Shown piece by piece: positions 13,074 through 23,385 of a DNA stretch of 64,000 nucleotides; within the stretch, counting starts at the first letter, position 1, and the number at the start of each line of letters is the position of its first letter. The notes below the pieces were generated by a model that did no database searches, was not told the DNA's origin, and saw only the letters and a program-made list of their open reading frames with translations. The DNA is taken from positions 62,001-126,000 of IMG/VR virus record IMGVR_UViG_3300020172_006270, one strand, 5' to 3'. The translations under genes and the position numbers were made by a program.

Positions 13074-13075
13074 AG

Positions 13076-13159
13076 TGACCTCGGTGGGACTTGAACCCAC
13101 ACGTCCTTTCGGACACAAGTTCCTAAGACTTGAGCGTATGCCAATTTCGCCACGAGGCC
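13076..13159 (-). tRNA. tRNA-Leu(TAG), long variable arm
   Basis: cloverleaf, CAAGT-CTTAGGA-ACTTG, GGTTCAAGTCC, A73. Confidence 0.95.
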
Positions 13160-13203
13160 GTTATTTTGCGCATGAGTTCGCCAAATTTTCGTGTTCGCCA
13201 TAC

Positions 13204-13232
13204 ATTTTACCACGTTTTCGGCATCTTGTAAA
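13204..13232 (-). promoter_or_regulatory. sigma70-type phage promoter
   Basis: TTTACA-17nt-TAAAAT with CGTGG. Confidence 0.7.
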
Positions 13233-13235
13233 ACG

Positions 13236-13317
13236 TAGCCCTGGCGGGACTCGAACCCGCAATCCTTTCGGCGACAGATTTTAAGTCTGTTGTGTATACC
13301 AATTCCACCACAGGGCC
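13236..13317 (-). tRNA. tRNA-Leu(TAA), long variable arm
   Basis: ACAGA-CTTAAAA-TCTGT, GGTTCGAGTCC. Confidence 0.95.
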
Positions 13318-13319
13318 GC

Positions 13320-13508
13320 TCATTCGTCTTTATCGTCTTTGTGACAGTCGCAATGACAACCTTTGTGTTTGTTCTTGTATTCTATGTACTTCCTGTATCT
13401 GATTTTATTGTACCAGTTGGTGCCGGTCATTGTTCCTAAAATGGCAAGGATTGCTGTCACCAGGATATAACCAATTTCTAAAAAGCCACCACAAATACAA
13501 GCAATCAT
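13320..13508 (-). CDS. small membrane protein with a Cys/His tail
   Basis: RBS GAGGA, MIACICGG..., one TM helix. Confidence 0.6.
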   Translation of the reverse strand: MIACICGGFLEIGYILVTAILAILGTMTGTNWYNKIRYRKYIEYKNKHKGCHCDCHKDDKDE

Positions 13509-13533
13509 TTCACTGTTCTTTCCTCGGAGTATC

Positions 13534-13577
13534 AAAAAAATGAGCATATCACCTAAGCCTTCTTCGGTGATATGCTC
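13534..13577 (-). terminator. intrinsic terminator downstream of the rRNA-like RNA
   Basis: GAGCAUAUCACC...GGUGAUAUGCUC followed by AUUUUUUU. Confidence 0.85.
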
Positions 13578-13604
13578 CCAGGCACCAGCAATGCAATGCC
13601 GGTG

Positions 13605-13794
13605 TCGAGTGTCAGGTTGGCTCGGCCAGTGTGCTATTACGCCAAAAGGGATCGCAAACAAGGAAGGCCCAAGTTTTCTCCCTACTCTTTGAATGGACCG
13701 GATTGCTCCGGCGCTGTGGCTGCTTCTAAGCCAACATCCTGGCTGTCTTTGTTTCCCCGAAAGGCAGGTCGTACCTTACCTCTAAATCACTCGA
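13605..13794 (-). ncRNA. structured RNA containing a 23S rRNA H42-H44 (GTPase-associated centre) mimic
   Basis: AGACAGCCAGGAUGUUGGCUUAGAAGCAGCCA [20-nt insert] CCAUUCAAAGAGU [41-nt insert] GCGUAAUAGCACACUGGCCGAG, closed by UCGAGUG/CACUCGA. Confidence 0.88.
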
Positions 13795-13840
13795 TCTACC
13801 GTAGTCATTGTATTCACAATGCTTCCTACAGCGGTTTGGC

Positions 13841-14275
13841 TCACTTATCCAACTTGGCAGGCACAGTGCCTTCCTTATTGGACTTGTCGGCAGCGATCTT
13901 TGGCTCAGGAACGAGCCATCGGGTCATTGCCGTAGTCTTAGTATAGCCAAATTGCTGAATGGCAGCGTGATACCCGTCTGCATAATTGTTTTCAGCACCG
14001 CAGAGCTTCAGTGCGTCATCCCAGCCGTCTTGATACGCACCGGGGGTTTGTGGGCCACCGATGCGAATCAGGGCGGCTTTATATCCCTGATCGTAGGTGG
14101 GCTTGCCAGCAAGCTCGGAGATTTCATCCTTGAGAATACGATGCTCGGCATCGTAGATGGAGTTCACCAGCGAGAGTCGCTGATTCTCCTTCTGAATATT
14201 CCAGGTGTGCCACGTCATTGCGCCAATGCACAATGCAGAAATCCCGGCAATGGTCCATCCAGTTTTCGTACTCAT
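13841..14275 (-). CDS. hypothetical membrane-anchored protein
   Basis: N-terminal TM helix; YDQGY/YQDGW/YADGY repeats. Confidence 0.7.
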   Translation of the reverse strand: MSTKTGWTIAGISALCIGAMTWHTWNIQKENQRLSLVNSIYDAEHRILKDEISELAGKPTYDQGYKAALIRIGGPQTPGAYQDGWDDALKLCGAENNYADGYHAAIQQFGYTKTTAMTRWLVPEPKIAADKSNKEGTVPAKLDK

Positions 14276-14356
14276 TTGCAATCTTCCTTCGGGTCTTGGT
14301 TTGGAAATCAACACAAAGTCGGAGTATACAGTCATGGAAGATAAAATCAAGCCGAG

Positions 14357-14773
14357 TTAGCTTGTCTTTTTGTCGCCATCACCACGTTGACGGGCGGCGA
14401 CGTAGAAGACGTAAGAAGTCTTGCTCTGACCCATAGCCATCTTGCTGGGAGATTCGGTTTGTCGGTAGGTAACTGCAAGTTTGGTTGTCGGAGTCTCGTA
14501 GGCCAGCAGTTCTTTCATCCTGGCTAGAATTGATGCAATAAACTGAGGACTGCCTGTGAGTCGCATTCCGTCTTCGCCATATGTGGAACCCTTGTGGGTA
14601 TAGTCAATGGCTTGCATCTGAACGGGCGTATCGGGACGTAAGTTCTTCCAGTAAGCCACAATTTCGTCTTTTGTGGCTTTCCATTTGGTCGATTGCTGAG
14701 AAGGGGCCGCTTGAGGCTGTTGTGCCTGCGGCTGCATTTCTTGCGATCCCATGAATTCCTTGAACGTCATCAT
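14357..14773 (-). CDS. hypothetical protein, possible internal head protein
   Basis: MMTFKEFM..E N-terminus; TATATA-N4-ATG upstream. Confidence 0.75.
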   Translation of the reverse strand: MMTFKEFMGSQEMQPQAQQPQAAPSQQSTKWKATKDEIVAYWKNLRPDTPVQMQAIDYTHKGSTYGEDGMRLTGSPQFIASILARMKELLAYETPTTKLAVTYRQTESPSKMAMGQSKTSYVFYVAARQRGDGDKKTS

Positions 14774-14776
14774 ACC

Positions 14777-15001
14777 TTATATACCGACTTTTGATCTGAT
14801 CTTGTCGCTGTGCTTGTGGACTTTTTTGTGATCCACGCCACCTTTGCGGTATGCCTTGTTCTTTTCTTCGGAATTCTGGTCGCTACAAGCCCCAATTACC
14901 TGATAATCACTGGTATCCGTGCAGTTTCCGATATACGGACCACTGCCCATTTCCCGGAGTTTGGCTTCTCTTGTCTGCATCCAGTCTTTGAATTTAATCA
15001 T
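14777..15001 (-). CDS. hypothetical protein, possible internal head protein
   Basis: MIKFKDWM..E N-terminus; TATATA-N4-ATG upstream. Confidence 0.7.
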   Translation of the reverse strand: MIKFKDWMQTREAKLREMGSGPYIGNCTDTSDYQVIGACSDQNSEEKNKAYRKGGVDHKKVHKHSDKIRSKVGI

Positions 15002-15004
15002 GCC

Positions 15005-15724
15005 TTATATATCACTGGACAAATCTAATGCAATTCCCCACTCTCGGTTTTTATTGGCAACGTAATTTCTAGTAGTTTTCGCCTTATCCAATATTTCAGC
15101 GTTGATCCGCTGGGTTTCTTTGATGTTTTTGTTGCGAAAATTCCTTGCTCGTTCTTTTTCGTTGTGGTCAATTGCTCGGCAAAAACGGAGCGGCGTCTCT
15201 GCGTATTTCAATTTGTTGTGCATTGCTGCACGAAATTCAAAGTCTATATCATCCCAGCCCCAGCCTACGTTCATATCTTCGTTGTAGCCATTGACGCTAT
15301 AGAAGTGTTCTCGACGGACGGCGATTTTCCCACAACTGCCAGACATATTGAACATATCAAATACGGGAGCAGTCATGATGCGATCTTTATTCTGCATGAC
15401 TTCTTGGATCAACTGAACAAAGCCGTCGATCAAGAAATTGTCGGCGTCTAAATTGCAAAGAATATCGCCGGTCGCTTGGCGATGAGCAATGTTTTTGGCG
15501 TGAGATGCCTGAAAGTGTTCGGGAAGCTGAGTTCGATAGTATTTGACGGTTCCACGCTCGATCCAGGGCCGGATATTGTCACGGACCCATTCGTGCATTC
15601 CGTCTTTGCTGCCATAATTAAGCAGCACAAACTCGCAATCTGGTGCGACATGAAGGTTTATGGGCAGGGTTCTCATTAGATGATGAACCCTGCCCATGCA
15701 AGTTGTGCAAAATGATATTTTCAA
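15005..15724 (-). CDS. GT-A glycosyltransferase (GT2/GT7-like)
   Basis: NLDAD, VNGYNEDM..GWGWDD. Confidence 0.88.
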   Translation of the reverse strand: MKISFCTTCMGRVHHLMRTLPINLHVAPDCEFVLLNYGSKDGMHEWVRDNIRPWIERGTVKYYRTQLPEHFQASHAKNIAHRQATGDILCNLDADNFLIDGFVQLIQEVMQNKDRIMTAPVFDMFNMSGSCGKIAVRREHFYSVNGYNEDMNVGWGWDDIDFEFRAAMHNKLKYAETPLRFCRAIDHNEKERARNFRNKNIKETQRINAEILDKAKTTRNYVANKNREWGIALDLSSDI

Positions 15725-15725
15725 A

Positions 15726-16376
15726 TTAGCCCTTCAAGAACAAGGCCATGAATCCTCTTGATAGTGGCGAATCATAATATCCAGTACACCGAGGATGTTT
15801 GGCCAAAGCGAAAATCTTTTCTCTATATTCGCTTTGAGTTTGTGGGCTTGTCCAATCAGGAGCGGAGTCAGACCGATATGGCGAAGTATCGTGAAATACT
15901 GCAAGTTTACGCAGCGTTCCTTTGTTGAGCATAATCTCGCATTCGAGGGGTCTGATCTCAGTCAGACTATCGAAGAATCCAATATCGAATACCATATTGG
16001 ATTGTTGTAAGAATTCAAGAGAATCAACGCAATGTACTTCAGCCCATTTAAGCAAGTGTTCTTCTTCAAGAACGGTTTGCAATCGAACGCATTGGGGTGG
16101 CAGAACTTCGAGAGAATGAACCTTGCCGAAGCCATTGAGTTTGCACGCATGAGCCAGAGCAGTTGTACCGAAGCCTTCCCAGGCACCAGTTTCCAAAACC
16201 AAGTCGGGCTTCAATACTCGAATGGTTGAGTGCAGCCAATTGAGGACTTCATATTCTGTTGAGCCGCCATCGGCTACTTCAAATAAGTCTGCACGTTCCG
16301 CTGCGATGTGTGGGTGAACATCGCATTCTCTAAGAATGGGACTCCAAGCTGGTTTCCAAGTATAATCTCGTTCCAC
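15726..16376 (-). CDS. class I SAM-dependent methyltransferase
   Basis: VLETGAWEG, GFFDS, VFHDT; paralogue of the next gene. Confidence 0.85.
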   Translation of the reverse strand: MERDYTWKPAWSPILRECDVHPHIAAERADLFEVADGGSTEYEVLNWLHSTIRVLKPDLVLETGAWEGFGTTALAHACKLNGFGKVHSLEVLPPQCVRLQTVLEEEHLLKWAEVHCVDSLEFLQQSNMVFDIGFFDSLTEIRPLECEIMLNKGTLRKLAVFHDTSPYRSDSAPDWTSPQTQSEYREKIFALAKHPRCTGYYDSPLSRGFMALFLKG

Positions 16377-16377
16377 T

Positions 16378-17019
16378 TCAACCCCTTAAAAACAAAGCAA
16401 TAAATCCTCTGGATAAAGTCCACTCAAAGTAGCCAGTGCAAAGAGGATTTTTTGCCATGTCGAATATTTTGTTTCTGAATGTGTCTTGTTCTTCTTTGGT
16501 AGTATACACTGTGGTTCGAGTTGCGGCTGTGTCGTGAAACACTGCTATTTTTTTGATTATTCCACGACGCATACAAATCATGCCTTCGTCGGCTTTGATT
16601 TCAATCAAAGTATCGAAGAACCCAATATCAAATATTAGATCGGTTTCTTCTAAAAACTTCATTGAATCGCATTCGTGAACCTCAGCCCATTCACTTAACC
16701 CCTCGTCAGCAAGTCGTTGTCGAACTTGTGCGCAAGTCTCCGGGTTATGTTCAAGAGAGTGAACTTTGCCAAATCCATTTAGCTTGCAGGCGTGAGCCAA
16801 AGCAATTGTCCCCATGCCCTCCCAGGCACCAGTTTCCAAAACCACTTCAGGTTTCATGACCCTAACGGTTGCATGGAGCCAATTCAGAACTTCAAATTCG
16901 GTAGAGCTAGGATCAGCAACATCGAACAAATGTGCTTTTTCACAGGCATCATGCAGATGAATATCAGCTTCGATTTGCAATGGAGTCCATGCAGGCTTCC
17001 AAGTGTAGTCTTTTTCCAT
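16378..17019 (-). CDS. class I SAM-dependent methyltransferase
   Basis: VLETGAWEG, GFFDT, VFHDT; tandem duplicate. Confidence 0.85.
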   Translation of the reverse strand: MEKDYTWKPAWTPLQIEADIHLHDACEKAHLFDVADPSSTEFEVLNWLHATVRVMKPEVVLETGAWEGMGTIALAHACKLNGFGKVHSLEHNPETCAQVRQRLADEGLSEWAEVHECDSMKFLEETDLIFDIGFFDTLIEIKADEGMICMRRGIIKKIAVFHDTAATRTTVYTTKEEQDTFRNKIFDMAKNPLCTGYFEWTLSRGFIALFLRG

Positions 17020-17298
17020 TTAACCGCCTAAAGATATTACCGATGCTGTGACTTCTTCGCCCGCTTCTTTTTGCTTTTGGCATTCTTTGAAAACACAAAT
17101 CATGCACAAAGCCGGGACGTGAGGGTTATTGACTTTCATTGTGGTTTGGCGAGGTCCAATCCAACATCCAACTCCACAATTCTCACAGGGAATCCTACCT
17201 GAACCTGCATGTGGAACATATGGCACATCTTCCATTCCAAGTCGATCTTTGGCTTCGATTGGAATAAGTGCCAATACATTCATTCTTTGCTCGTCCAC
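17020..17298 (-). CDS. hypothetical Zn-binding protein
   Basis: CENC...CMIC. Confidence 0.65.
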   Translation of the reverse strand: MDEQRMNVLALIPIEAKDRLGMEDVPYVPHAGSGRIPCENCGVGCWIGPRQTTMKVNNPHVPALCMICVFKECQKQKEAGEEVTASVISLGG

Positions 17299-17316
17299 GA
17301 TTATTTCCTTCTTGGA

Positions 17317-17550
17317 TTATATATCGCCCCGGCGAATGATCCCGGATTTCATCAGCGATGGAACGTCATTGGGATTAAGACCATGTAATTCTTTGTAGTG
17401 CCTTTGCACCAAGTATCTTTCAACACCAATGCTGAAAGGCATCCATTCACCAAGTTCAGCGGACAGTTTGGTGATTTCCGCTTCTTTGTTTTTGTCCCGA
17501 TAGTGCAGGGGAAGGCCACAAGCACAGCGTTTGACTTGATTTCTACTCAT
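17317..17550 (-). CDS. hypothetical protein
   Basis: MSRNQVKRCACGLPLHY. Confidence 0.6.
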   Translation of the reverse strand: MSRNQVKRCACGLPLHYRDKNKEAEITKLSAELGEWMPFSIGVERYLVQRHYKELHGLNPNDVPSLMKSGIIRRGDI

Positions 17551-17914
17551 CGAACTGCCCTTTTGGAATTGGTCCATATTGTCTTGCCATGCACGCTCTG
17601 AGGTATCGTCTTGTAAGACGTTCAAGGCTTGGCAAATACATGGTGATGAAAGCCTGTCGCAGTTCGCTGATTTCTTTTTTGCCGGGGTTGAAGCCTTTGG
17701 GTCGAAGGTATCCTGATATGCTCACGCCTGTTGGCCGGTGTATCAGAAATACCGCTCGCAACTTTTTGTGTTTTTCGTTTTTGTCTGACCGGACGCAGAC
17801 TTCTCCTGGTCGTATTTTGAATTTTCCAAAAGAATAATCCGACACGCATCTTTGAAGCACGCTGTTGTCAATGTGCATTGATTCTCGAACTTGCGTGGCG
17901 TTAGGTTTTCGCAT
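17543..17914 (-). CDS. hypothetical protein
   Basis: overlap-coupled ORF; AVFLIHRPTGVSI weakly recalls the RF-1 domain but has no GGQ. Confidence 0.55.
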   Translation of the reverse strand: MRKPNATQVRESMHIDNSVLQRCVSDYSFGKFKIRPGEVCVRSDKNEKHKKLRAVFLIHRPTGVSISGYLRPKGFNPGKKEISELRQAFITMYLPSLERLTRRYLRACMARQYGPIPKGQFDE

Positions 17915-18086
17915 TGGCTTTTTGTTTCCAACAGACTGCGTGGTAAATGGCAGGCAATCCATCTATCGCTATGATTTCTGGATCGAGGACATATTTGCGG
18001 TTGATCTTGAGTGCATGGCCGCACTTACGACATTGCCGATTCTTATGCTTGCAATTTTTCGTGACTTTGTATTCGGGTCGCATCAT
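17901..18086 (-). CDS. hypothetical Cys-rich small protein
   Basis: CRKCG...YHAVC. Confidence 0.55.
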   Translation of the reverse strand: MMRPEYKVTKNCKHKNRQCRKCGHALKINRKYVLDPEIIAIDGLPAIYHAVCWKQKANAKT

Positions 18087-18361
18087 CGTTCCTCGATGTC
18101 GGTTCCCCAAAAACCAAATCGGAACCAGAAGGTCTTGCCGTCTTCGACTTGGACTTTATAGATGCGACAATTTTTGCTATGCCAGAACGGTCCAATATCG
18201 AAATGGTGTCGATCTATGCTGGAAACAACATGCTTGTTCGTCGCAGCCCAGGTATTTATTTCCTTTCGGTCGCTGGATTCCTGCGCAGGCAGAATTATGA
18301 GTGCCAATAGCAAAAACACAACAACGACGACAGCCAAAATCTTCTTTTCCATGATCTCCAT
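18083..18361 (-). CDS. hypothetical membrane-anchored protein
   Basis: N-terminal hydrophobic helix. Confidence 0.65.
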   Translation of the reverse strand: MEIMEKKILAVVVVVFLLLALIILPAQESSDRKEINTWAATNKHVVSSIDRHHFDIGPFWHSKNCRIYKVQVEDGKTFWFRFGFWGTDIEER

Positions 18362-18371
18362 CCATAAACGA

Positions 18372-18400
18372 CAAAAGCGTGGTGATTATACCACGCTTTT
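18372..18400 (-). terminator. terminator after tuf, overlapping a CGTGGTATAAT -10 element
   Basis: AAAAGCGTGGT-GATTAT-ACCACGCTTTT inverted repeat. Confidence 0.65.
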
Positions 18401-18408
18401 GCGTTTCT

Positions 18409-19581
18409 TTACAGCAGTTCCGTCACGACGCCTGAGCCAATCGTCATACCGCCCTCTCGGATAGCGAAATGACTGCCTTTTTCAATGGCAATCGGCTTAT
18501 CCAGGGTGATAAACAGGCAAGTGTTCTCGCCCGGCATAACCAATTCGATTCCTTCCGGCATTTCAACAAGGCCGGTGACGTTAGTGGTTCGGAAGAAGAA
18601 CTGCGGCTTATAACCGTTGAAGATCGGGGTGTGACGCCCGCCCTCATCCTTGCCCAAGACGTAAATTTCACTCTTGAACTTGGTGTGAGGTTTGATACTT
18701 CGTGGTTGTGCCACAACCTGTCCACGCTCCACCTGATCGGCTTTGATGCCTCTCAGCAGCAACCCGACGTTCTGACCAGCTTCGCCAAATTCCAATTGCT
18801 TGTTGAAGGCTTCGACGCTGGTGACAACCGATTCCAGAATGTCTCCCAGGCCCAAGATTTCAACTTTGGTTCCGACCGTGACGGTTCCTTGCTCGATCTT
18901 GCCCGTGACTACACAGCCACGACCTTCGATGTTGTGAACGCCCTCGATAGGCATCAAGAAAGGACGGTCAATAGAACGGCTGGGGTCAGGGATATAAGAA
19001 TCCAGAGCCGCCATCAGTTCTACGATGCACTTGCTTGCTGCGGGATCGGCAGGGTTATCCAGAGCGGGCTTTGCGGCCCCACGGATAAAGGGAGTCTTCT
19101 CACCATCGAAGCCATACTTCGTCAGCAAGTCTCTCGTTTCCATCTCGACCAGTTCGAGCAATTCCTTATCCTGAACCAGATCACACTTATTGAGGAACAC
19201 GACAATATCCGGCACGCCCACCTGACGAGCGAGCAGAATATGCTCTTTCGTCTGAGGCATAGGACCGTCTGCTGCATTGACGAGCAATACAGCGCCGTCC
19301 ATTTGAGCGGCCCCGGTAATCATGTTCTTCACATAGTCGGCGTGACCAGGGCAGTCGATGTGAGCATAGTGACGGGTATCCGTCTCATACTCAACGTGCG
19401 ACGTGGTGATCGTTACCGTTTTGGTAACGTCACGAACGGTGCCGCCCTTGGCGATGTCGCCGTATGCTTTCTTTTTTGCGAAACCCTTTTCGGCCTGAAC
19501 AGCGAGAATAGCTGCGGTCAGGGTCGTCTTCCCGTGGTCAATGTGACCAATCGTTCCGACATTGATGTGGACTTTCTTCAC
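18409..19581 (-). CDS. tuf: elongation factor Tu
   Basis: [54 protein letters not shown]; GTG start after AGGAG. Confidence 0.98.
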
Positions 19582-19705
19582 TTTACTTTCTCCTGTGATC
19601 TTTACGATAGATCACTGTTGGAGGTTTTGATCTCTATATCCCCACTACAGAATAGTGTTTCTACTCACAACGAGTAAGAGCCAAGGCATCCAGAAATCGA
19701 AACAG

Positions 19706-19789
19706 TGCCGCTCCCCGGACTTGAACCGGGACGCCGGTAAAGGCATCAGATTTTGAGTCTGACGTGTCTGCCAATTCCACCAGAGCGGC
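19706..19789 (-). tRNA. tRNA-Leu(CAA), long variable arm
   Basis: TCAGA-CTCAAAA-TCTGA. Confidence 0.95.
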
Positions 19790-19802
19790 ATAAACAAAAC
19801 AG

Positions 19803-19877
19803 TGACGGGTGTGGGACTCGAACCCACAAAACCATGATTTTAAGTCACGGATGTCTGCCTAGTTGCATCAACCCGCC
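19803..19877 (-). tRNA. tRNA-Leu(TAA), short variable loop
   Basis: CGTGA-CTTAAAA-TCATG, variable region GTTTT. Confidence 0.88.
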
Positions 19878-19883
19878 ATACAG

Positions 19884-19960
19884 TGCCAGCGGTGGGACTC
19901 GAACCCACAAAACCCCGGCTCTCGACCGGAGATGTCTACCATAGGTTGCATCACGCTGGC
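19884..19960 (-). tRNA. tRNA-Leu(GAG), short variable loop, C33
   Basis: TCCGG-TCGAGAG-CCGGG, variable region GTTTT. Confidence 0.82.
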
Positions 19961-19992
19961 ATATAGTGCCGGATCGCTCCAGCACTAATCTC

Positions 19993-20295
19993 TTAATCCT
20001 CACCACGCAACTCTTTGAGTTGTTCGTTGTAGTCCACGTCAGACTTCAATTCGTGATTGTGCTTTGACCGCTTTGGATACTTGTCGCTATGACAGATGCC
20101 GCACTGCGGATTGCCACAATCGAAAGCGTCTTTCTTACGGAATCGACCCTTCTGTTCATCACATTCACAGTCAACAACATATGCGCTGACGCCAATGCGA
20201 TTTCTTGTCCAGGTTTTGTTGCTCTCAACGTGAGAGCGCCGGTGTTTCTTCCACTCACGCAGAGTGATCTTGTAATCCTCGTGCCACCGCTTCAT
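19993..20295 (-). CDS. small basic Cys-containing hypothetical protein
   Basis: RBS GGAGG; CGNPQCGICH. Confidence 0.75.
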   Translation of the reverse strand: MKRWHEDYKITLREWKKHRRSHVESNKTWTRNRIGVSAYVVDCECDEQKGRFRKKDAFDCGNPQCGICHSDKYPKRSKHNHELKSDVDYNEQLKELRGED

Positions 20296-20376
20296 CGTTC
20301 CCTCCATAATGGGTTTGGGTAATAGGCTCGATGAAGCCGATGATTTGCGTGTGGTGAGTGTTCATGTTTATTCTCT

Positions 20377-20829
20377 CTAGTTAAGGAAGCAACAGTCCGG
20401 GTTGGGACACCAATCTCCGAACTCTTCGGATTGGGTGTCAGAAATCAATCGTGTGTAACAGCAACGGCAATGTCCTTTGACCCACCATGCTGGGCCGAAC
20501 CATCGAAAGCCGCCACGAGTTGTTTCGTAGTAGCATCCAATTCGTTCTAGCCAATCCATAATAGTGTGGGCGATCATTCGCCGTTCAGCATCACGCCATG
20601 AGTAAGGAAATTCATGCCACTCATAGCCATGACCACTTTCTCGGTATTGATGATCTCGACCGAGATACTTCCATGATTTTTGCTTGCGAACAAACTGATC
20701 GTCCCATGCCGTGGGAAGGTTTCGTCTCTTCCCACGGACATAGGGATCATTGCGGTCTTGGTTCGCTCTTATTTCTTGTGTTGTTCTCGGATACCGAAGG
20801 CACGTCGAGAACCATCTTTTCTTTGCCAT
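20377..20829 (-). CDS. basic hypothetical protein
   Basis: RBS AGGAG; RYPRTTQE..RGKRRNLPTAWDD; C-terminal Cys cluster. Confidence 0.75.
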   Translation of the reverse strand: MAKKRWFSTCLRYPRTTQEIRANQDRNDPYVRGKRRNLPTAWDDQFVRKQKSWKYLGRDHQYRESGHGYEWHEFPYSWRDAERRMIAHTIMDWLERIGCYYETTRGGFRWFGPAWWVKGHCRCCYTRLISDTQSEEFGDWCPNPDCCFLN

Positions 20830-20858
20830 GTAGCGTTTCTCCTAAGTGCGGAATGCAC

Positions 20859-20894
20859 TTAAAAGACGCTACCCAGCCTTTCGTGAATTTTCAT
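20859..20894 (-). CDS. putative 11-aa leader peptide MKIHERLGSVF
   Basis: AGGA RBS; stop codon lies in a hairpin that sequesters the RBS of the 20829 gene. Confidence 0.5.
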   Translation of the reverse strand: MKIHERLGSVF

Positions 20895-21028
20895 ACGAGT
20901 CCTTTTACTTTGTTCTTTCAAATATGTGGACTGTCGAATCCTTGACAGTTTTACTTACCGATCATAGGCGATCCTATCGCTACCGGGGTCAGCCTCATGT
21001 TCATCCTGAACATCAGCGTCCACTTCCA

Positions 21029-21541
21029 TCAACCCGTCCAAATTTCTTCTTTTCCAGTCGGCGGGTCATTCAATCTCTTCAAAAATTTACCTGTATATTT
21101 ATGGTCTTCGGGGTTCAAACCCTTCCGCAAATACCGCACATCTGGTGTTACTTCTCGTTCCGAATACTGATATTCAATGCCCAGCCGAGTGTGTTTGATG
21201 ATTTTCTTTTCTTTATCCACCCATTCGTATTCACGAGCCTGATCGACAACTACAGTGCCTTTCATGCCTTCGATGTCGATGTCATATTCGTGCATGTTCT
21301 GGATTTCAATTTCGTCTTCTTCAACCAACGCCCAACAAGGATAGCTGTACCGTTTAGGCGGTGGGTTTTCATGGATCGGTCCACCCATCAACATTCGTCG
21401 CAAGAGAGCCGAGTGGCCAACATCAGCCGAACTTGAACCTCGTTTATTGTCTTCGCAGATATTCATCCACTGGCAAACCATCTTGCAAGCGAACTCACAC
21501 TGCTCACGAGTCAACGATGTAACTTTTTCTTCGTCCATCAT
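21029..21541 (-). CDS. hypothetical protein
   Basis: RBS GGAG; lies between tRNA blocks. Confidence 0.75.
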   Translation of the reverse strand: MMDEEKVTSLTREQCEFACKMVCQWMNICEDNKRGSSSADVGHSALLRRMLMGGPIHENPPPKRYSYPCWALVEEDEIEIQNMHEYDIDIEGMKGTVVVDQAREYEWVDKEKKIIKHTRLGIEYQYSEREVTPDVRYLRKGLNPEDHKYTGKFLKRLNDPPTGKEEIWTG

Positions 21542-21555
21542 ATTCTCCAACAAAG

Positions 21556-21632
21556 TACCCAGGACGGGACTCGAACCCGTAAAACCGATATTTTGAGTAT
21601 CGGATGTCTACCGAAGGTTGCATCACCTGGGC
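21556..21632 (-). tRNA. tRNA-Leu(CAA), short variable loop
   Basis: CGATA-CTCAAAA-TATCG, variable region GTTTT. Confidence 0.88.
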
Positions 21633-21669
21633 ATATTCTACCAAATCTCGTCTTGGCTGTACAGCCAAG

Positions 21670-21757
21670 TGGACAGCGACGGAATCGAACCGCTCCGGCA
21701 CCCACCCTACTTTTTTAATGCCAACGGATTTACAGTCCGCCGTAAGGAACGCTATCC
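21670..21757 (-). tRNA. tRNA-Tyr(GTA)-like, no D-arm, enlarged variable arm
   Basis: acceptor GGATAGC/GCTGTCC-A, GCGGA-CTGTAAA-TCCGT, GGTTCGATTCC. Confidence 0.78.
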
Positions 21758-21814
21758 ATGTTTTCCTAAAAACAGGTGTTTTCCCACATAGGAAAACATG
21801 CGTTTTTAGGAAAG

Positions 21815-21888
21815 TCGCTCCGGTGGGACTCGAACCCACAGCATCCCTGGTTCTAAGCCAAGGTGGTCTGCCAATTGCCTACAGAGCG
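21815..21888 (-). tRNA. tRNA-Leu(TAG), short variable loop
   Basis: CTTGG-CTTAGAA-CCAGG, variable region GATGC. Confidence 0.88.
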
Positions 21889-21894
21889 TTCAAG

Positions 21895-21966
21895 TGGACT
21901 GTGAGGCGCTCGAATCCTCGTCTCAGCGTTTTCAGCGCTGCGCTACACCATCTCAGCTAACAGTCC
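21895..21966 (-). tRNA. tRNA-Phe(GAA), atypical T-arm
   Basis: CAGCG-CTGAAAA-CGCTG. Confidence 0.82.
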
Positions 21967-21974
21967 ATATACAG

Positions 21975-22058
21975 TGTCCGAGGGGAGAGTCGAACTCCCA
22001 CGCCTTTTACGGCACAAGGCCCTCAACCTTGCGTGTCTACCAATTTCACCACTCGGAC
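21975..22058 (-). tRNA. tRNA-Leu(GAG), long variable arm
   Basis: CAAGG-TTGAGGG-CCTTG. Confidence 0.95.
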
Positions 22059-22070
22059 AAAACAAATCAG

Positions 22071-22145
22071 TGGGCTGTCTCAGAGTCGAACTGAGTTCTC
22101 ATGTTCTTCAGACATGCGCTGAATGACCGCACTAGCTCACAGCCC
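22071..22145 (-). tRNA. tRNA-Phe(GAA)
   Basis: CATGT-CTGAAGA-ACATG. Confidence 0.88.
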
Positions 22146-22154
22146 AATATTCAA

Positions 22155-22334
22155 TTATTCTTTTGTTGCTTCTTCAAGTTCCCTGATGCAATCTCGCAAT
22201 GATATTGTTCGTCCATGCTGGACGCCCATTGCAGTCAATGGGTTCATATCTTTTGCGACATTAGGATTCTCTTGAAATCGCTTCAATCGTTCTTTCCATT
22301 TTTGAATCAATTCTTGTATATTTGTTTCTTGCAT
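22155..22334 (-). CDS. hypothetical small protein
   Basis: RBS AAGGA, MQETNIQELI. Confidence 0.65.
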   Translation of the reverse strand: MQETNIQELIQKWKERLKRFQENPNVAKDMNPLTAMGVQHGRTISLRDCIRELEEATKE

Positions 22335-22350
22335 ATTTAATCCTTCCAAG

Positions 22351-22434
22351 TCTCCGGGGGGAGAGTCGAACTCCCACGCCTTTTACGGCACAAGATTCTG
22401 AGTCTTGCGTGTCTACCAATTCCACCACCCGGAG
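22351..22434 (-). tRNA. tRNA-Leu(CAG), long variable arm
   Basis: CAAGA-CTCAGAA-TCTTG. Confidence 0.95.
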
Positions 22435-22441
22435 ATAAAAG

Positions 22442-22530
22442 CGGAAGTCAAGGGAATTGAACCCTTACCGGATATTTCACCGGGCCTGTTTTCAAGACAG
22501 GTGCAACAAACCAATATTTGCCTAACTTCC
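22442..22530 (-). tRNA. tRNA-Ser(TGA)
   Basis: CCTGT-CTTGAAA-ACAGG, long arm, G73. Confidence 0.92.
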
Positions 22531-22555
22531 ATATTGTGTCAACAACTTTGACATA

Positions 22556-22627
22556 GAGGATACACCGGCTTCGACACCGGATATGTCCCGTTTCTAGCAG
22601 GATGAGTTACATTTCTCCATGTACTCC
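22556..22627 (-). tRNA. degenerate tRNA-like element, anticodon AGA (Ser)
   Basis: GGAGTACA/TGTATCC bulged acceptor, GAG/CTC D-stem, TCCTG-CTAGAAA-CGGGA, aberrant T-loop. Confidence 0.5.
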
Positions 22628-22646
22628 ATATCGCATTTGACACAAG

Positions 22647-22733
22647 CGGAAGCCAAGGGAATTGAACCCTCACCGGGATTAACCGGGCCTGTTTTCGAGA
22701 CAGGTGCAACAAACCAGTATTTGCCTAGCTTCC
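22647..22733 (-). tRNA. tRNA-Ser(CGA)
   Basis: CCTGT-CTCGAAA-ACAGG. Confidence 0.92.
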
Positions 22734-22746
22734 ATAAAACAACAAG

Positions 22747-22836
22747 CGGAGGACAAGGGAATCGAACCCTCACCGGGTATTTCACCGGATCGGTTTAGCA
22801 AACCGACGTAGCAACACCACCATCTACCTATCCTCC
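22747..22836 (-). tRNA. tRNA-Ser(GCT)
   Basis: TCGGT-TTGCTAA-ACCGA. Confidence 0.92.
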
Positions 22837-22842
22837 ATTCAG

Positions 22843-22931
22843 CGGAAGCCAAGGGAATTGAACCCTCACCGGATATTTCACCGGACCCGCTTTCCAGGCG
22901 AGCGCAACAAACCAGTATTTGCCTAGCTTCC
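22843..22931 (-). tRNA. tRNA-Ser(GGA)
   Basis: CTCGC-CTGGAAA-GCGGG. Confidence 0.92.
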
Positions 22932-22987
22932 GTGTAATGCACTATACTTTGAACATTAACCAGGGCTAATGTTCATTCTATCGTACA

Positions 22988-23287
22988 TTATGCTTCAACC
23001 TTCACCAACTTGCCAAAGATACAGTTCCGGCCAACCCAGCCATTGATATGGCCTTTGTTGTTGCCGATCTGGAATCGGTCGCCTTGTATTGCTTTGATTA
23101 AGTGCAGGTATTGTTTGCCTGCAACTTTGCACAATACAATGTCGCCCGTATCCAAAACGCCAGTCACCGGCTCGACAGTGCATAACTGTCCTGATTCGAT
23201 CTTCCCGACCATTGAGTTGCCTCGTGGTCGAAACGAAACCGTCTCACCTGTTTGGAGTTTCGCTATGTAACCAGTCGCCCATCCCAT
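22988..23287 (-). CDS. S24/S26 peptidase-like protein
   Basis: RPRGNSM, GDIVLC, YLHLIK. Confidence 0.75.
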   Translation of the reverse strand: MGWATGYIAKLQTGETVSFRPRGNSMVGKIESGQLCTVEPVTGVLDTGDIVLCKVAGKQYLHLIKAIQGDRFQIGNNKGHINGWVGRNCIFGKLVKVEA

Positions 23288-23301
23288 AGTAATTCTCCAA
23301 G

Positions 23302-23385
23302 TGCATCCGGCAGGAATCGAACCTGCATGTCCCGAAGGAGGCTGGGTTACAGCCAGCTAGACCCACCACACTGTCTAACGGATGC
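23302..23385 (-). tRNA. tRNA-Tyr(GTA)
   Basis: GCTGG-CTGTAAC-CCAGC, long arm, atypical D-arm. Confidence 0.9.

What the first reader, a model, noticed from the sequence alone, without database searches (positions are those of the whole stretch)
19803..21888. A second set of tRNA-Leu genes with short variable loops
Seen: Leu anticodons TAA, GAG, CAA and TAG each occur both as a normal long-arm tRNA and as a 74-77 nt tRNA with a 5-nt variable loop and A73. Three share a TGATGCAAC..GG(T/C)AGACATC D-arm. Established: bacterial tRNA-Leu normally has a long arm, and LeuRS relies largely on A73 and tertiary shape. Inference: these are either armless Leu tRNAs that escape class-II-specific nucleases, or tRNAs charged with another amino acid.
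Basis: partly seen in the sequence, partly recalled or inferred. Interest (0 to 1): 0.72.

Follow-up and report, generated by a model that had tools for sequence, protein, structure and literature searches.

The report
Short-armed leucine tRNAs in a huge phage
A huge phage that probably infects planctomycete bacteria carries four real leucine tRNA genes lacking the usual long extra arm; they belong to a little-noticed family also present in phage T5 and in mobile bacterial tRNA arrays, so they are interesting but not new in kind.

Summary
On the minus strand at 19803-19877, 19884-19960, 21556-21632 and 21815-21888 lie four 74-77 nt tRNAs. Their anticodons are UAA, GAG, CAA and UAG. Each has a 5-nt variable loop and A73, and each has a normal long-armed partner in the same cluster.

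They are not oddities of this window. The same two scaffolds occur in dozens of other viral contigs, always with leucine anticodons and A73, and with strong compensatory change in every stem. They keep every nucleotide that bacterial LeuRS is known to use: A73, A14, A15-U48, G18G19, C56 and A58. They lack the marks of Ala or Ser identity.

Scaffold A resembles both tRNA-Leu genes of T5-like phages and those of the Nostoc plasmid tRNA array. Scaffold B is 92-94% identical to tRNA-Leu(UAG) in the long tRNA arrays of Planctomycetota. A complete 226 kb phage has only short-armed tRNA-Leu genes.

The best reading is genuine "type I" tRNA-Leu, charged by the host LeuRS. Whether losing the arm helps escape arm-directed toxins such as MenT3 or AbiEii remains untested. 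These are new members of a known but neglected kind.

The parts
19803..19877 (-). Type I (short variable loop) tRNA-Leu(UAA), scaffold A, 75 nt, A73, no encoded CCA
   Evidence: ARAGORN; Rfam 44.6 bits. A homologue in L002/L009 has four compensatory acceptor-stem changes. About 70% identical to T5-group tRNA-Leu(UAA).
19884..19960 (-). Type I tRNA-Leu(GAG), scaffold A, 77 nt, A73, anticodon loop UCGAGAG with C33
   Evidence: Rfam 35.5 bits. The same loop and scaffold occur in L013, L029 and L037.
21556..21632 (-). Type I tRNA-Leu(CAA), scaffold A, 77 nt, G1-U72, A73
   Evidence: Rfam 40.1 bits. Identical copies in L003, L004, L006 and L010-L012.
21815..21888 (-). Type I tRNA-Leu(UAG), scaffold B, 74 nt, A73
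   Evidence: ARAGORN; Rfam 44.1 bits. It is 94% identical to the copy in the Schlesneria tRNA array and 92-93% identical to planctomycete array tRNA-Leu(UAG).
13076..13159 (-). Canonical long-armed (type II) tRNA-Leu(UAG), partner of 21815-21888
13236..13317 (-). Canonical type II tRNA-Leu(UAA), partner of 19803-19877
19706..19789 (-). Canonical type II tRNA-Leu(CAA), partner of 21556-21632
21975..22058 (-). Canonical type II tRNA-Leu(GAG), partner of 19884-19960
22351..22434 (-). Type II tRNA-Leu(CAG); there is no short-armed counterpart in the window
   Evidence: It is 75% identical to the type II CAG gene of planctomycete arrays.
18409..19581 (-). Phage-encoded EF-Tu directly downstream of the tRNA cluster (context and host indicator)
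   Evidence: Pfam GTP_EFTU 4.4e-56 plus domains 2 and 3. The nearest named homologues are Planctomycetota EF-Tu at 75-77% identity.

Best explanation
The four genes are functional type I tRNA-Leu isoacceptors: the ordinary bacterial tRNA-Leu body with the long variable arm replaced by a 5-nt loop. They are probably transcribed with the surrounding tRNA cluster and receive CCA from the host enzyme. They are most likely leucylated by the host (planctomycete) LeuRS, which reads A73 and the D/T-loop elbow rather than the anticodon or the arm. They then decode UUR and CUN leucine codons alongside the phage's five long-armed tRNA-Leu. They belong to a horizontally mobile lineage of short-armed tRNA-Leu found in phage tRNA clusters and bacterial long tRNA arrays. 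Scaffold A is shared with T5-like phages and the Nostoc plasmid array; scaffold B is shared with Planctomycetota arrays. Shown here: cloverleaf, conservation, covariation, leucine-only anticodons, retained identity nucleotides, and homology. Inferred: transcription, processing and leucylation in this host. Unresolved: why the arm-less form is kept.
For: 1. Rfam scores are 35-45 bits for all four.
2. I aligned 54 distinct homologues from other viral contigs. In that alignment 95.9% of stem cells are paired, 18 of 21 pairs change on both sides, and there are 340 compensatory cells. No shuffle out of 500 reached these values, and slid controls gave 32-47% pairing.
3. The homologues were selected only by D-arm pattern, yet all 54 carry leucine anticodons (UAA, UAG, CAA, CAG, GAG, AAG) and A73. 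The same holds for 83 hits (72 distinct sequences) in Planctomycetota. The two scaffolds swap anticodons between related phages: A-UAG and B-UAA in L010, against A-UAA and B-UAG here.
4. U8, A14, A15, G18, G19, U48, C56, A58 and A73 are invariant, and U54/U55 are at least 90% conserved. This is the E. coli and Aquifex LeuRS recognition set as listed in PMC6614811.
5. The short and long forms align collinearly apart from the missing arm.
6. A phage record rated 100% complete (G009, 226 kb, 39 tRNAs) has five tRNA-Leu genes, all 74-75 nt, and no long one.
7. T5-group phage 5 (AJ604531) has two tRNA-Leu genes, both 77 nt including CCA. 335 phage records matched the scaffold A query.
8. The Nostoc PCC 7120 array has four tRNA-Leu genes, all short. 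23 of its 26 tRNAs are aminoacylated in vivo (PMC8421152), so at least one short tRNA-Leu is charged.
9. S. coelicolor type I tRNA-Leu(CAA) is leucylated by its LeuRS (PMC6614811).
10. No LeuRS was found in the phage record.
Against: There is no direct evidence of expression, processing or charging for these four genes. Public runs held only 90-95% similar short contigs, and transcription was not shown. E. coli LeuRS failed to charge the S. coelicolor type I tRNA-Leu, so acceptance of arm-less tRNA-Leu is not universal, and planctomycete LeuRS has not been tested. The phage record is only 46% complete, so a phage-encoded synthetase in the missing half cannot be excluded. The GAG gene has C33 instead of the near-universal U33. 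Scaffold B has only two Watson-Crick pairs in its D stem.
Confidence: 0.72

Rival explanations
1. Adaptive escape. The arm-less form is kept because it is invisible to host or competitor factors that recognise class II tRNAs by the long variable arm, such as MenT/AbiEii-type nucleotidyltransferase toxins or Schlafen-like nucleases. Leucine decoding would then continue when long-armed tRNA-Leu is inactivated. This concerns why the form is kept and is compatible with the best explanation.
For: MenT3 needs the long variable arm: deleting it abolishes efficient modification, and grafting it onto tRNA-Met confers modification (PMC11541572). [quoted passage not shown] Both planctomycete genomes I checked carry 2-3 AbiEii-family genes, while the phage records carry none. 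Phage tRNAs that evade tRNA-targeting defences are documented (PMC10264068, PMC11555353, PMC11464382, listed). The cluster also holds structurally deviant Tyr- and Phe-type tRNAs.
Against: No toxin that targets tRNA-Leu through its arm is known in planctomycetes. The phage also keeps five long-armed tRNA-Leu genes and long-armed Ser and Tyr tRNAs, which could not escape. [quoted passage not shown] AbiEii genes are widespread, so their presence is weak evidence (3 of 14 control genomes).
Confidence: 0.25
2. Portability or streamlining. The arm was lost because bacterial LeuRS does not need it. A tRNA-Leu without an arm cannot be mistaken for tRNA-Ser or tRNA-Tyr by a new host's SerRS or TyrRS, which suits tRNA sets that move between hosts. 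No defence system is involved.
For: The short form occurs specifically in horizontally mobile tRNA sets across phyla: T5-like phages, huge phages, and the Planctomycetota and Nostoc arrays. The Singulisphaera core genome, by contrast, has a complete long-armed set. Ser and Tyr tRNAs, whose synthetases use the arm, stay long in all these sets. Deleting all base pairs of the arm of S. coelicolor tRNA-Leu(UAA) does not harm charging.
Against: This does not explain why the window keeps both forms for four anticodons. It also leaves unexplained why cellular core genomes almost never lose the arm if the loss is harmless. In S. coelicolor, LeuRS efficiency is about two-fold lower for the short tRNA.
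Confidence: 0.3
3. The short tRNAs are charged with an amino acid other than leucine, giving deliberate recoding or mistranslation of Leu codons.
For: The class I shape is shared with all non-Leu, non-Ser, non-Tyr tRNAs. A73 is not unique to Leu. Some array tRNAs in Anabaena migrate aberrantly on acid gels, and the authors mention possible misacylation, though only for Phe and Ile.
Against: Synthetases other than LeuRS, SerRS and AlaRS depend on the anticodon (established knowledge; PMC11028032 abstract), and these anticodons are all leucine. No G3-U70 occurs in 54 sequences (pair 3-78). There is no long arm or G73 for SerRS. The full LeuRS tertiary set is invariant. These tRNAs are the only tRNA-Leu in G009 and in T5-group phages, where wholesale miscoding of leucine would be lethal to the phage.
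Confidence: 0.04
4. They are not used in translation. They would be decaying duplicates, decoys that soak up tRNA-targeting enzymes, or processing or recombination signals.
For: There are no expression data. Their Rfam scores (35-45 bits) are lower than those of canonical tRNAs. The cluster does contain degenerate tRNA-like elements (at relaxed threshold). Bacterial long arrays are often poorly transcribed.
Against: Compensatory change in all four stems, invariant tertiary nucleotides and strict retention of leucine anticodons are the signature of selection on decoding. A decoy would not need a conserved Leu anticodon together with A73. These tRNAs are the only tRNA-Leu in some complete phage tRNA sets.
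Confidence: 0.05

Closest known systems
tRNA-Leu1 (UAG) and tRNA-Leu2 (UAA) of T5-group phages (GenBank AJ604531, Tequintavirus; also Aeromonas Demerecviridae such as Akh-2)
   Same: Phage-encoded, 74 nt plus CCA. They have a 5-nt variable loop GUUUU or GUUCU and A73. The D arm has the form UG-AUG-N-AAUUGGCA-N-A-CAU with a 3-bp stem, and the T arm is the same. Identity to window scaffold A is about 70%, with a BLAST hit across the variable region. They function in E. coli as a suppressor after an anticodon change (record note).
   Different: T5 encodes CCA, and these are its only tRNA-Leu genes. The window genes lack CCA, number four, sit beside a full long-armed set, and are in a phage of a different host phylum. 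Scaffold B is not found in T5.
tRNA-Leu genes of Planctomycetota long tRNA arrays (L-arrays; e.g. Schlesneria sp. T3-172, Singulisphaera acidiphila, many MAGs)
   Same: Scaffold B is 92-94% identical to the array tRNA-Leu(UAG), differing mainly in the acceptor stem. The arrays also hold short UAA, CAA and GAG genes, the last with the same C33 loop, and a long CAG gene. This is the same short/long split as in the window.
   Different: The array UAA, CAA and GAG genes use a third D-arm variant (UACGC..GCG), not scaffold A. The arrays are chromosomal, with 20-43 genes for nearly all amino acids in a conserved order. The window cluster holds only Leu, Ser, Tyr and Phe tRNAs in a different order.
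Nostoc/Anabaena sp. PCC 7120 pCC7120delta tRNA operon (L-array; PMC8421152)
   Same: All four of its tRNA-Leu genes are short (75-78 nt). The UAA gene has the scaffold A D arm UGAUGCAAUUGGCAGACAU. 23 of its 26 tRNAs are aminoacylated in vivo under translational stress.
   Different: It is plasmid-borne in a cyanobacterium. Overall identity to the window genes is only about 54%. The published papers I read do not comment on the missing arm.
Streptomyces coelicolor type I tRNA-Leu(CAA) (Fan et al., NAR 2019, PMC6614811)
   Same: It is a bacterial tRNA-Leu with a 5-nt variable loop that coexists with long-armed isoacceptors and is leucylated by the single LeuRS. The five-nucleotide length of the loop is critical.
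   Different: It is a single, essential chromosomal gene. Its variable loop is ACAGC, with C48 rather than U48. In that system A73 is not a determinant. E. coli LeuRS cannot charge it. I did not test sequence relatedness to the phage scaffolds.
Animal mitochondrial tRNA-Leu
   Same: Class I shape and A73, charged by a bacterial-type LeuRS.
   Different: It sits in an organellar setting with relaxed structure and a dedicated synthetase, and nothing here indicates common descent.
Phage tRNAs that evade tRNA-targeting defences (T5 tRNA-Lys against PARIS, T5 tRNA-Tyr against Retron-Eco7, mycobacteriophage anticodon-loop variants)
   Same: These are phage-encoded isoacceptors that differ structurally from host tRNAs at the feature a defence enzyme recognises.
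   Different: In those cases the changes lie in the anticodon stem-loop and the defence system is known. Here the change is loss of a whole arm and no cognate defence has been identified.

Membership tests
tRNA (Rfam RF00005) | Cloverleaf scoring above the 29-bit gathering threshold | tested here: met
   Scores are 44.6, 35.5, 40.1 and 44.1 bits.
tRNA (Rfam RF00005) | Stems maintained by compensatory substitutions among homologues | tested here: met
   95.9% of stem cells are paired, 340 cells change on both sides, and no shuffle out of 500 reached this.
Bacterial tRNA-Leu (LeuRS substrate) | Leucine anticodon (NAA or NAG) | tested here: met
   The window genes carry UAA, GAG, CAA and UAG. All 54 viral and 83 planctomycete homologues also carry Leu anticodons.
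Bacterial tRNA-Leu (LeuRS substrate) | Discriminator A73 | tested here: met
   Invariant in the alignment and in all 83 planctomycete copies.
Bacterial tRNA-Leu (LeuRS substrate) | Tertiary recognition set: A14(-U8), A15-U48, G18G19-U55C56, U54-A58 (as listed in PMC6614811) | tested here: met
   U8, A14, A15, G18, G19, U48, C56 and A58 are invariant, and U54/U55 are at least 90% conserved across 54 sequences.
Bacterial tRNA-Leu (LeuRS substrate) | Long variable arm (class II shape) | tested here: not met
   The variable loop is 5 nt. The arm defines the class but has not been shown to be required by bacterial LeuRS.
Bacterial tRNA-Leu (LeuRS substrate) | Actual leucylation | not testable with these tools
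   Only indirect evidence exists: the T5 suppressor note, charging of Anabaena array tRNAs and S. coelicolor kinetics.
Type I (short-loop) tRNA-Leu of phages and L-arrays | tRNA-Leu body with a 4-6 nt variable loop and sequence homology to T5-group or array genes | tested here: met
   Scaffold A gives BLAST hits to 335 phage records spanning the variable region. Scaffold B is 94% identical to the Schlesneria array copy. The short and long forms align collinearly.
tRNA array unit (Tran et al. 2016 definition) | At least 20 tRNA genes at a density of at least 2 per kb | tested here: not met
   The window has about 18 tRNA or tRNA-like genes over 10.3 kb (13075-23385), interrupted by ORFs.
tRNA-Ala identity | G3-U70 pair | tested here: not met
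   Pair 3-70 is CG, UA, GC or AU in all 54 sequences, never GU.
tRNA-Ser identity | Long variable arm and G73 | tested here: not met
   Short loop and A73.
Suppressor or recoding tRNA | Anticodon complementary to a stop codon, or mismatch between body and anticodon | tested here: not met
   None of the aligned sequences has a stop anticodon, and a Leu-type body goes with a Leu anticodon throughout. Two scaffold B copies scored as UCA are register ambiguities of CAA with a 31-39 mismatch.

The most novel reading that the evidence does not exclude
Loss of the variable arm from tRNA-Leu is a recurrent, selected hallmark of mobile tRNA sets: phage tRNA clusters and horizontally transferred L-arrays in Planctomycetota, Cyanobacteria and enterobacterial phages. 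On this reading it makes leucine decoding immune to defence or competition effectors that grip class II tRNAs by that arm (MenT/AbiEii-type nucleotidyltransferases, Schlafen-like nucleases). The window's paired long and short sets would then be a supply set plus a toxin-proof set.
Probability: 0.2. Interest if true: 0.8.

Novelty: new member of a known kind. Interest (0 to 1): 0.45.

Why it matters
Textbooks treat the long variable arm as a fixed feature of bacterial tRNA-Leu. This window, together with the relatives traced from it, shows that an arm-less tRNA-Leu lineage is common in mobile tRNA sets. It covers all six leucine anticodons and runs from phage T5 to roughly half-megabase phages and to the tRNA arrays of Planctomycetota and Nostoc. 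I found no paper in the searchable library that makes this connection.

Three uses follow. It gives natural substrates for asking what the arm is for. It provides a clean test of whether arm-directed toxins such as MenT3 or AbiEii drive phage tRNA evolution. It is also a practical warning for annotation, because ARAGORN at default settings missed two of the four genes. As a by-product, the tRNA and EF-Tu similarities assign this uncultured huge phage to a planctomycete host.

Tried and rejected
1. RNA evidence. The look-up of sequencing runs and read laying returned only short contigs 90-95% similar, from relatives, in libraries whose RNA nature is only guessed. This is inconclusive and says nothing about expression.
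2. A phage-encoded LeuRS. There is none in the 223 kb record. G001, G005, G006, G007 and G009 have none above the cut-off, only partial class I synthetase matches in G001 and G005. The record is 46% complete, so absence is not proven.
3. My initial idea that scaffold B is phage-specific. I rejected it after the genome scan showed it is abundant in Planctomycetota chromosomes.
4. My next idea that scaffold B is the ordinary core tRNA-Leu of planctomycetes. I rejected this too. The copies sit in long tRNA arrays, and Singulisphaera has a complete long-armed core set.
5. The idea that the phage encodes only class II tRNAs plus Phe. All tRNAs in G000-G004 are Leu, Ser, Tyr or Phe, but the contigs are 11-51% complete. 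Complete relatives-by-tRNA such as G005-G009 have 26-64 tRNAs of all kinds. This cannot be assessed.
6. Plasmid BLAST with scaffold B found no match.
7. Ala and Ser identity and stop-codon suppression are rejected (see the membership test).
8. ARAGORN folds of the two 77-nt genes as 'Asp(atc)' and 'Val(gac)' at relaxed threshold are mis-folds.
9. Terminator-like calls at 19850-19832 and 19931-19913 are simply the anticodon stem followed by the U-rich variable loop.
10. Not done: a phylogenetic test of single versus repeated origin of the short form (sequences too short), and comparison with the S. coelicolor gene (sequence not in hand).
Full report
**What is there**

The window is bases 62001-126000 of a 223 kb IMG/VR virus record that CheckV rates 46% complete. 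That implies a genome of roughly half a megabase. The window encodes a tail sheath, a ribonucleotide reductase and an SbcC-like nuclease, so it is phage DNA.

All tRNA genes of the record lie on the minus strand between window positions 13075 and 23385. ARAGORN at default settings reports 14 genes:
- seven Leu
- four Ser
- two Phe
- one Tyr

Two of the Leu calls are short: UAA at 19802-19877 and UAG at 21814-21888. Rfam's tRNA model also finds 19884-19960 (35.5 bits) and 21556-21632 (40.1 bits). All four exceed the 29-bit threshold.

Read directly, the four genes are 75, 77, 77 and 74 nt long. Each has:
- a 7-bp acceptor stem
- U8
- a Leu-type D loop (AA..GG[C/U]AGA)
- a 5-bp anticodon stem extended by a C26-G44 pair
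- a 7-nt anticodon loop
- a 5-nt variable loop
- a standard T arm
- A73

None encodes CCA. The anticodons are UAA, GAG, CAA and UAG. Each anticodon also occurs in a normal 83-85 nt long-armed gene in the cluster; CAG occurs only in long form. The UAG gene has a different one (scaffold B).

**Are they real genes?**

I scanned IMG/VR with the two D-arm motifs, leaving the anticodon unconstrained. After discarding coding-region chance hits, this gave 54 distinct tRNA-shaped sequences. Many come from contigs of 200-530 kb.

Every one has a leucine anticodon and A73:

| Scaffold | Anticodons (count) |
|---|---|
| A | CAA 8, CAG 7, GAG 4, UAA 3, UAG 1, AAG 1 |
| B | CAA 11, UAG 6, CAG 5, UAA 5, GAG 3 |

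On the alignment the cloverleaf is paired in 95.9% of cells. 18 of 21 pairs show changes on both sides, giving 340 compensatory cells. No shuffle out of 500 reached these values, and slid controls pair at only 32-47%.

In closely related phage fragments (G001-G004) the same genes recur with compensatory acceptor-stem changes. The two scaffolds also exchange anticodons: A-UAG and B-UAA in L010, against A-UAA and B-UAG here. Together this is the signature of selection on a decoding tRNA whose charging does not depend on the anticodon.

**Which amino acid?**

U8, A14, A15, G18, G19, U48, C56, A58 and A73 are invariant across the 54 sequences, and U54/U55 are at least 90% conserved. This is the recognition set reported for E. 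coli and Aquifex LeuRS: A73, A14, A15-U48, G18G19-U55C56 and U54-A58, as summarised in PMC6614811.

When short and long tRNA-Leu from the window, related phages and bacteria are aligned, every domain is collinear. The only difference is a 10-16 nt gap where the arm would be.

G3-U70, the Ala mark, never occurs. The Ser marks (long arm, G73) are absent. All other synthetases read the anticodon (established knowledge), and the anticodons here are leucine.

Three independent lines show such tRNAs work:
- **T5-group phages.** In phage 5 of the T5 group (AJ604531) both tRNA-Leu genes are 77 nt including CCA, so both are short-armed. The record notes that converting the UUA reader to CUA gives an effective amber suppressor. 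335 phage records, mostly T5-like phages of Salmonella and Escherichia plus Aeromonas Demerecviridae, match scaffold A across the variable region.
- **A complete phage.** The 226 kb phage G009, rated 100% complete, has 39 tRNAs. Its five tRNA-Leu genes are all 74-75 nt, and it has none with an arm.
- **S. coelicolor.** Its short-armed tRNA-Leu(CAA) is leucylated by its single LeuRS (PMC6614811).

I conclude that leucine is by far the most likely cargo. One caveat applies. E. coli LeuRS did not charge the S. coelicolor tRNA, so acceptance depends on details. No LeuRS gene is present in the phage record.

**Where the scaffolds come from, and the host**

Almost all were from Planctomycetota, including Singulisphaera acidiphila, Schlesneria sp. 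T3-172, Bremerella, Gimesia, Kuenenia and many MAGs. The 83 copies I parsed (72 distinct) carry UAG (48), CAG (26), CAA (5), GAG (2) or UAA (2), and all have A73.

These are not solitary core genes. They sit in long tRNA arrays of 20-43 genes in 4-8 kb with a conserved order. Such L-arrays have been described as horizontally spread and supernumerary (PMC8421152 and PMC4758250).

Across 77 such loci:
- 182 of 218 tRNA-Leu genes are short.
- The long ones are mostly CAG. This matches the window, where CAG is the only anticodon without a short copy.
- The array GAG genes have the same unusual C33 loop (UCGAGAG) as the window's short GAG gene.

Singulisphaera also has a full dispersed set of long-armed tRNA-Leu genes. 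The cells, like the phage, therefore carry two sets.

The window's scaffold B gene is 94% identical to the Schlesneria array copy and 92-93% identical to others, but only 64% identical to its own long-armed partner. The phage EF-Tu gene next to the cluster (18409-19581) has its closest named homologues in Planctomycetota, at 75-77% identity. Both results point to a planctomycete host.

Scaffold A is different. It resembles T5-group and Aeromonas phage tRNA-Leu at about 70% identity. It also shares its D arm with the tRNA-Leu(UAA) of the Nostoc PCC 7120 plasmid array, where all four tRNA-Leu genes are short. In that array 23 of 26 tRNAs are aminoacylated in vivo under translational stress, so at least one short tRNA-Leu is charged there.

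**How it most likely works, and what remains open**

Shown:
- The four genes are conserved, structurally constrained tRNAs.
- They are restricted to leucine anticodons and keep the LeuRS identity set.
- They are members of a mobile lineage.

Inferred:
- They are co-transcribed with the cluster and completed with CCA by the host enzyme.
- They are leucylated by the host LeuRS and used at UUR and CUN codons.

Open: why the arm-less form is maintained. I see two non-exclusive candidate reasons.

1. **Escape from arm-directed effectors.** MenT3 needs the long arm (PMC11541572). The abortive-infection toxin AbiEii appears to prefer class II tRNAs (bioRxiv 10.64898/2026.01.19.700257). AbiEii-family genes are present in both planctomycete genomes I checked. 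Against this, the phage also keeps long-armed Leu, Ser and Tyr tRNAs, and no Leu-directed effector is known in this phylum.
2. **Portability.** LeuRS does not need the arm, whereas SerRS and TyrRS use it. An arm-less tRNA-Leu would therefore keep its identity in any host. This fits its restriction to mobile sets while Ser and Tyr tRNAs stay long.

I could not discriminate between these two.

**Comparison with the literature, and novelty**

Short-armed tRNA-Leu is known from:
- animal mitochondria
- S. coelicolor (2019)
- the T5-group sequence records, at the sequence level
- a cyanobacterial survey that noted 5-nt loops among tRNA-Leu genes without comment (PMC6933170)

Library searches for type I or arm-less tRNA-Leu returned only the S. 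coelicolor paper. The array surveys I read do not mention the feature.

The window's genes are thus new members of a known kind. The broader pattern they led to, arm-less tRNA-Leu as a hallmark of mobile tRNA sets across phyla, seems not to have been stated. It is worth a systematic survey and a toxin-sensitivity test.

**Limits**

- There are no expression or charging data for these genes; the run search was inconclusive.
- The phage record is incomplete.
- The origin of the short form, single or repeated, was not tested.
- The T5 suppressor note does not say which amino acid is inserted.

Noticed in passing
window 18409-19581 (-): A complete three-domain EF-Tu gene lies about 120 nt downstream of the last tRNA of the cluster. 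Its closest named homologues are Planctomycetota EF-Tu at 75-77% identity, with closer unnamed metagenomic relatives at 81-91%. A phage-borne EF-Tu beside a cluster of deviant tRNAs may be functionally linked to them.
   Followed up: partly
window 21670-21758 (-): A tRNA-like gene has a GUA (Tyr) anticodon, A73, a very short D arm (UUCCUUAC) and an A-rich long variable region. It lies between the short UAG and CAA genes. It is conserved in L010 and L011, with compensatory changes in the acceptor and anticodon stems. Rfam gives only a sub-threshold tRNA-Sec match (31 bits). A canonical tRNA-Tyr lies at 23301-23385.
   Followed up: partly
window 22071-22145 (-): A second tRNA-Phe(GAA) has an enlarged 13-nt D loop (Rfam 44.6 bits). 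It lies next to a normal 72-nt tRNA-Phe at 21895-21966 and is conserved in L011.
   Followed up: no
window 19884-19960 (-) and homologues: Short-armed tRNA-Leu(GAG) carries C33 instead of U33 (loop UCGAGAG). This holds in all four phage scaffold A copies and in most planctomycete array copies. It is a conserved departure from a near-universal tRNA nucleotide.
   Followed up: partly
L011 2102-2190 (related phage G003): An 89-nt class-II-shaped tRNA carries a GAA (Phe) anticodon. It lies between the deviant tRNA-Phe and tRNA-Leu(GAG) and is absent from the window. It could be a Leu-type body reading Phe codons.
   Followed up: no
window 22556-22627 (-): A weak tRNA-like element lies between two tRNA-Ser genes. 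ARAGORN finds it only at relaxed threshold, with anticodon AGA; the L011 homologue reads AAA. It is probably a decaying tRNA.
   Followed up: no
L097-L176 (Planctomycetota genomes): Long tRNA arrays of 20-43 genes share a conserved order (Phe Glu Pro Ile Lys ... Val Leu Leu Asp Leu Tyr Glu Leu Met Leu Val Thr Ala ...). They occur across the Planctomycetales, Pirellulales, Gemmatales, Isosphaerales and Brocadiales. Schlesneria has about 45 tRNA genes within 4.5 kb (G011 826-831 kb).
   Followed up: partly
window 15005-17019 (-): Two adjacent paralogous SAM-methyltransferase ORFs (Methyltransf_24; 15726-16376 and 16378-17019) and a family 2 glycosyltransferase (15005-15724) lie between the two groups of tRNA genes.
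   Followed up: no
window 21776-21810 (-) and 21640-21665 (-): A long perfect hairpin lies upstream of the Tyr-like gene. A conserved hairpin (CUUGGCUGUACAGCCAAG) followed by a TAGAAT box lies just upstream of the short tRNA-Leu(CAA). Both are conserved in L010 and L011 and may be processing or promoter signals.
   Followed up: no
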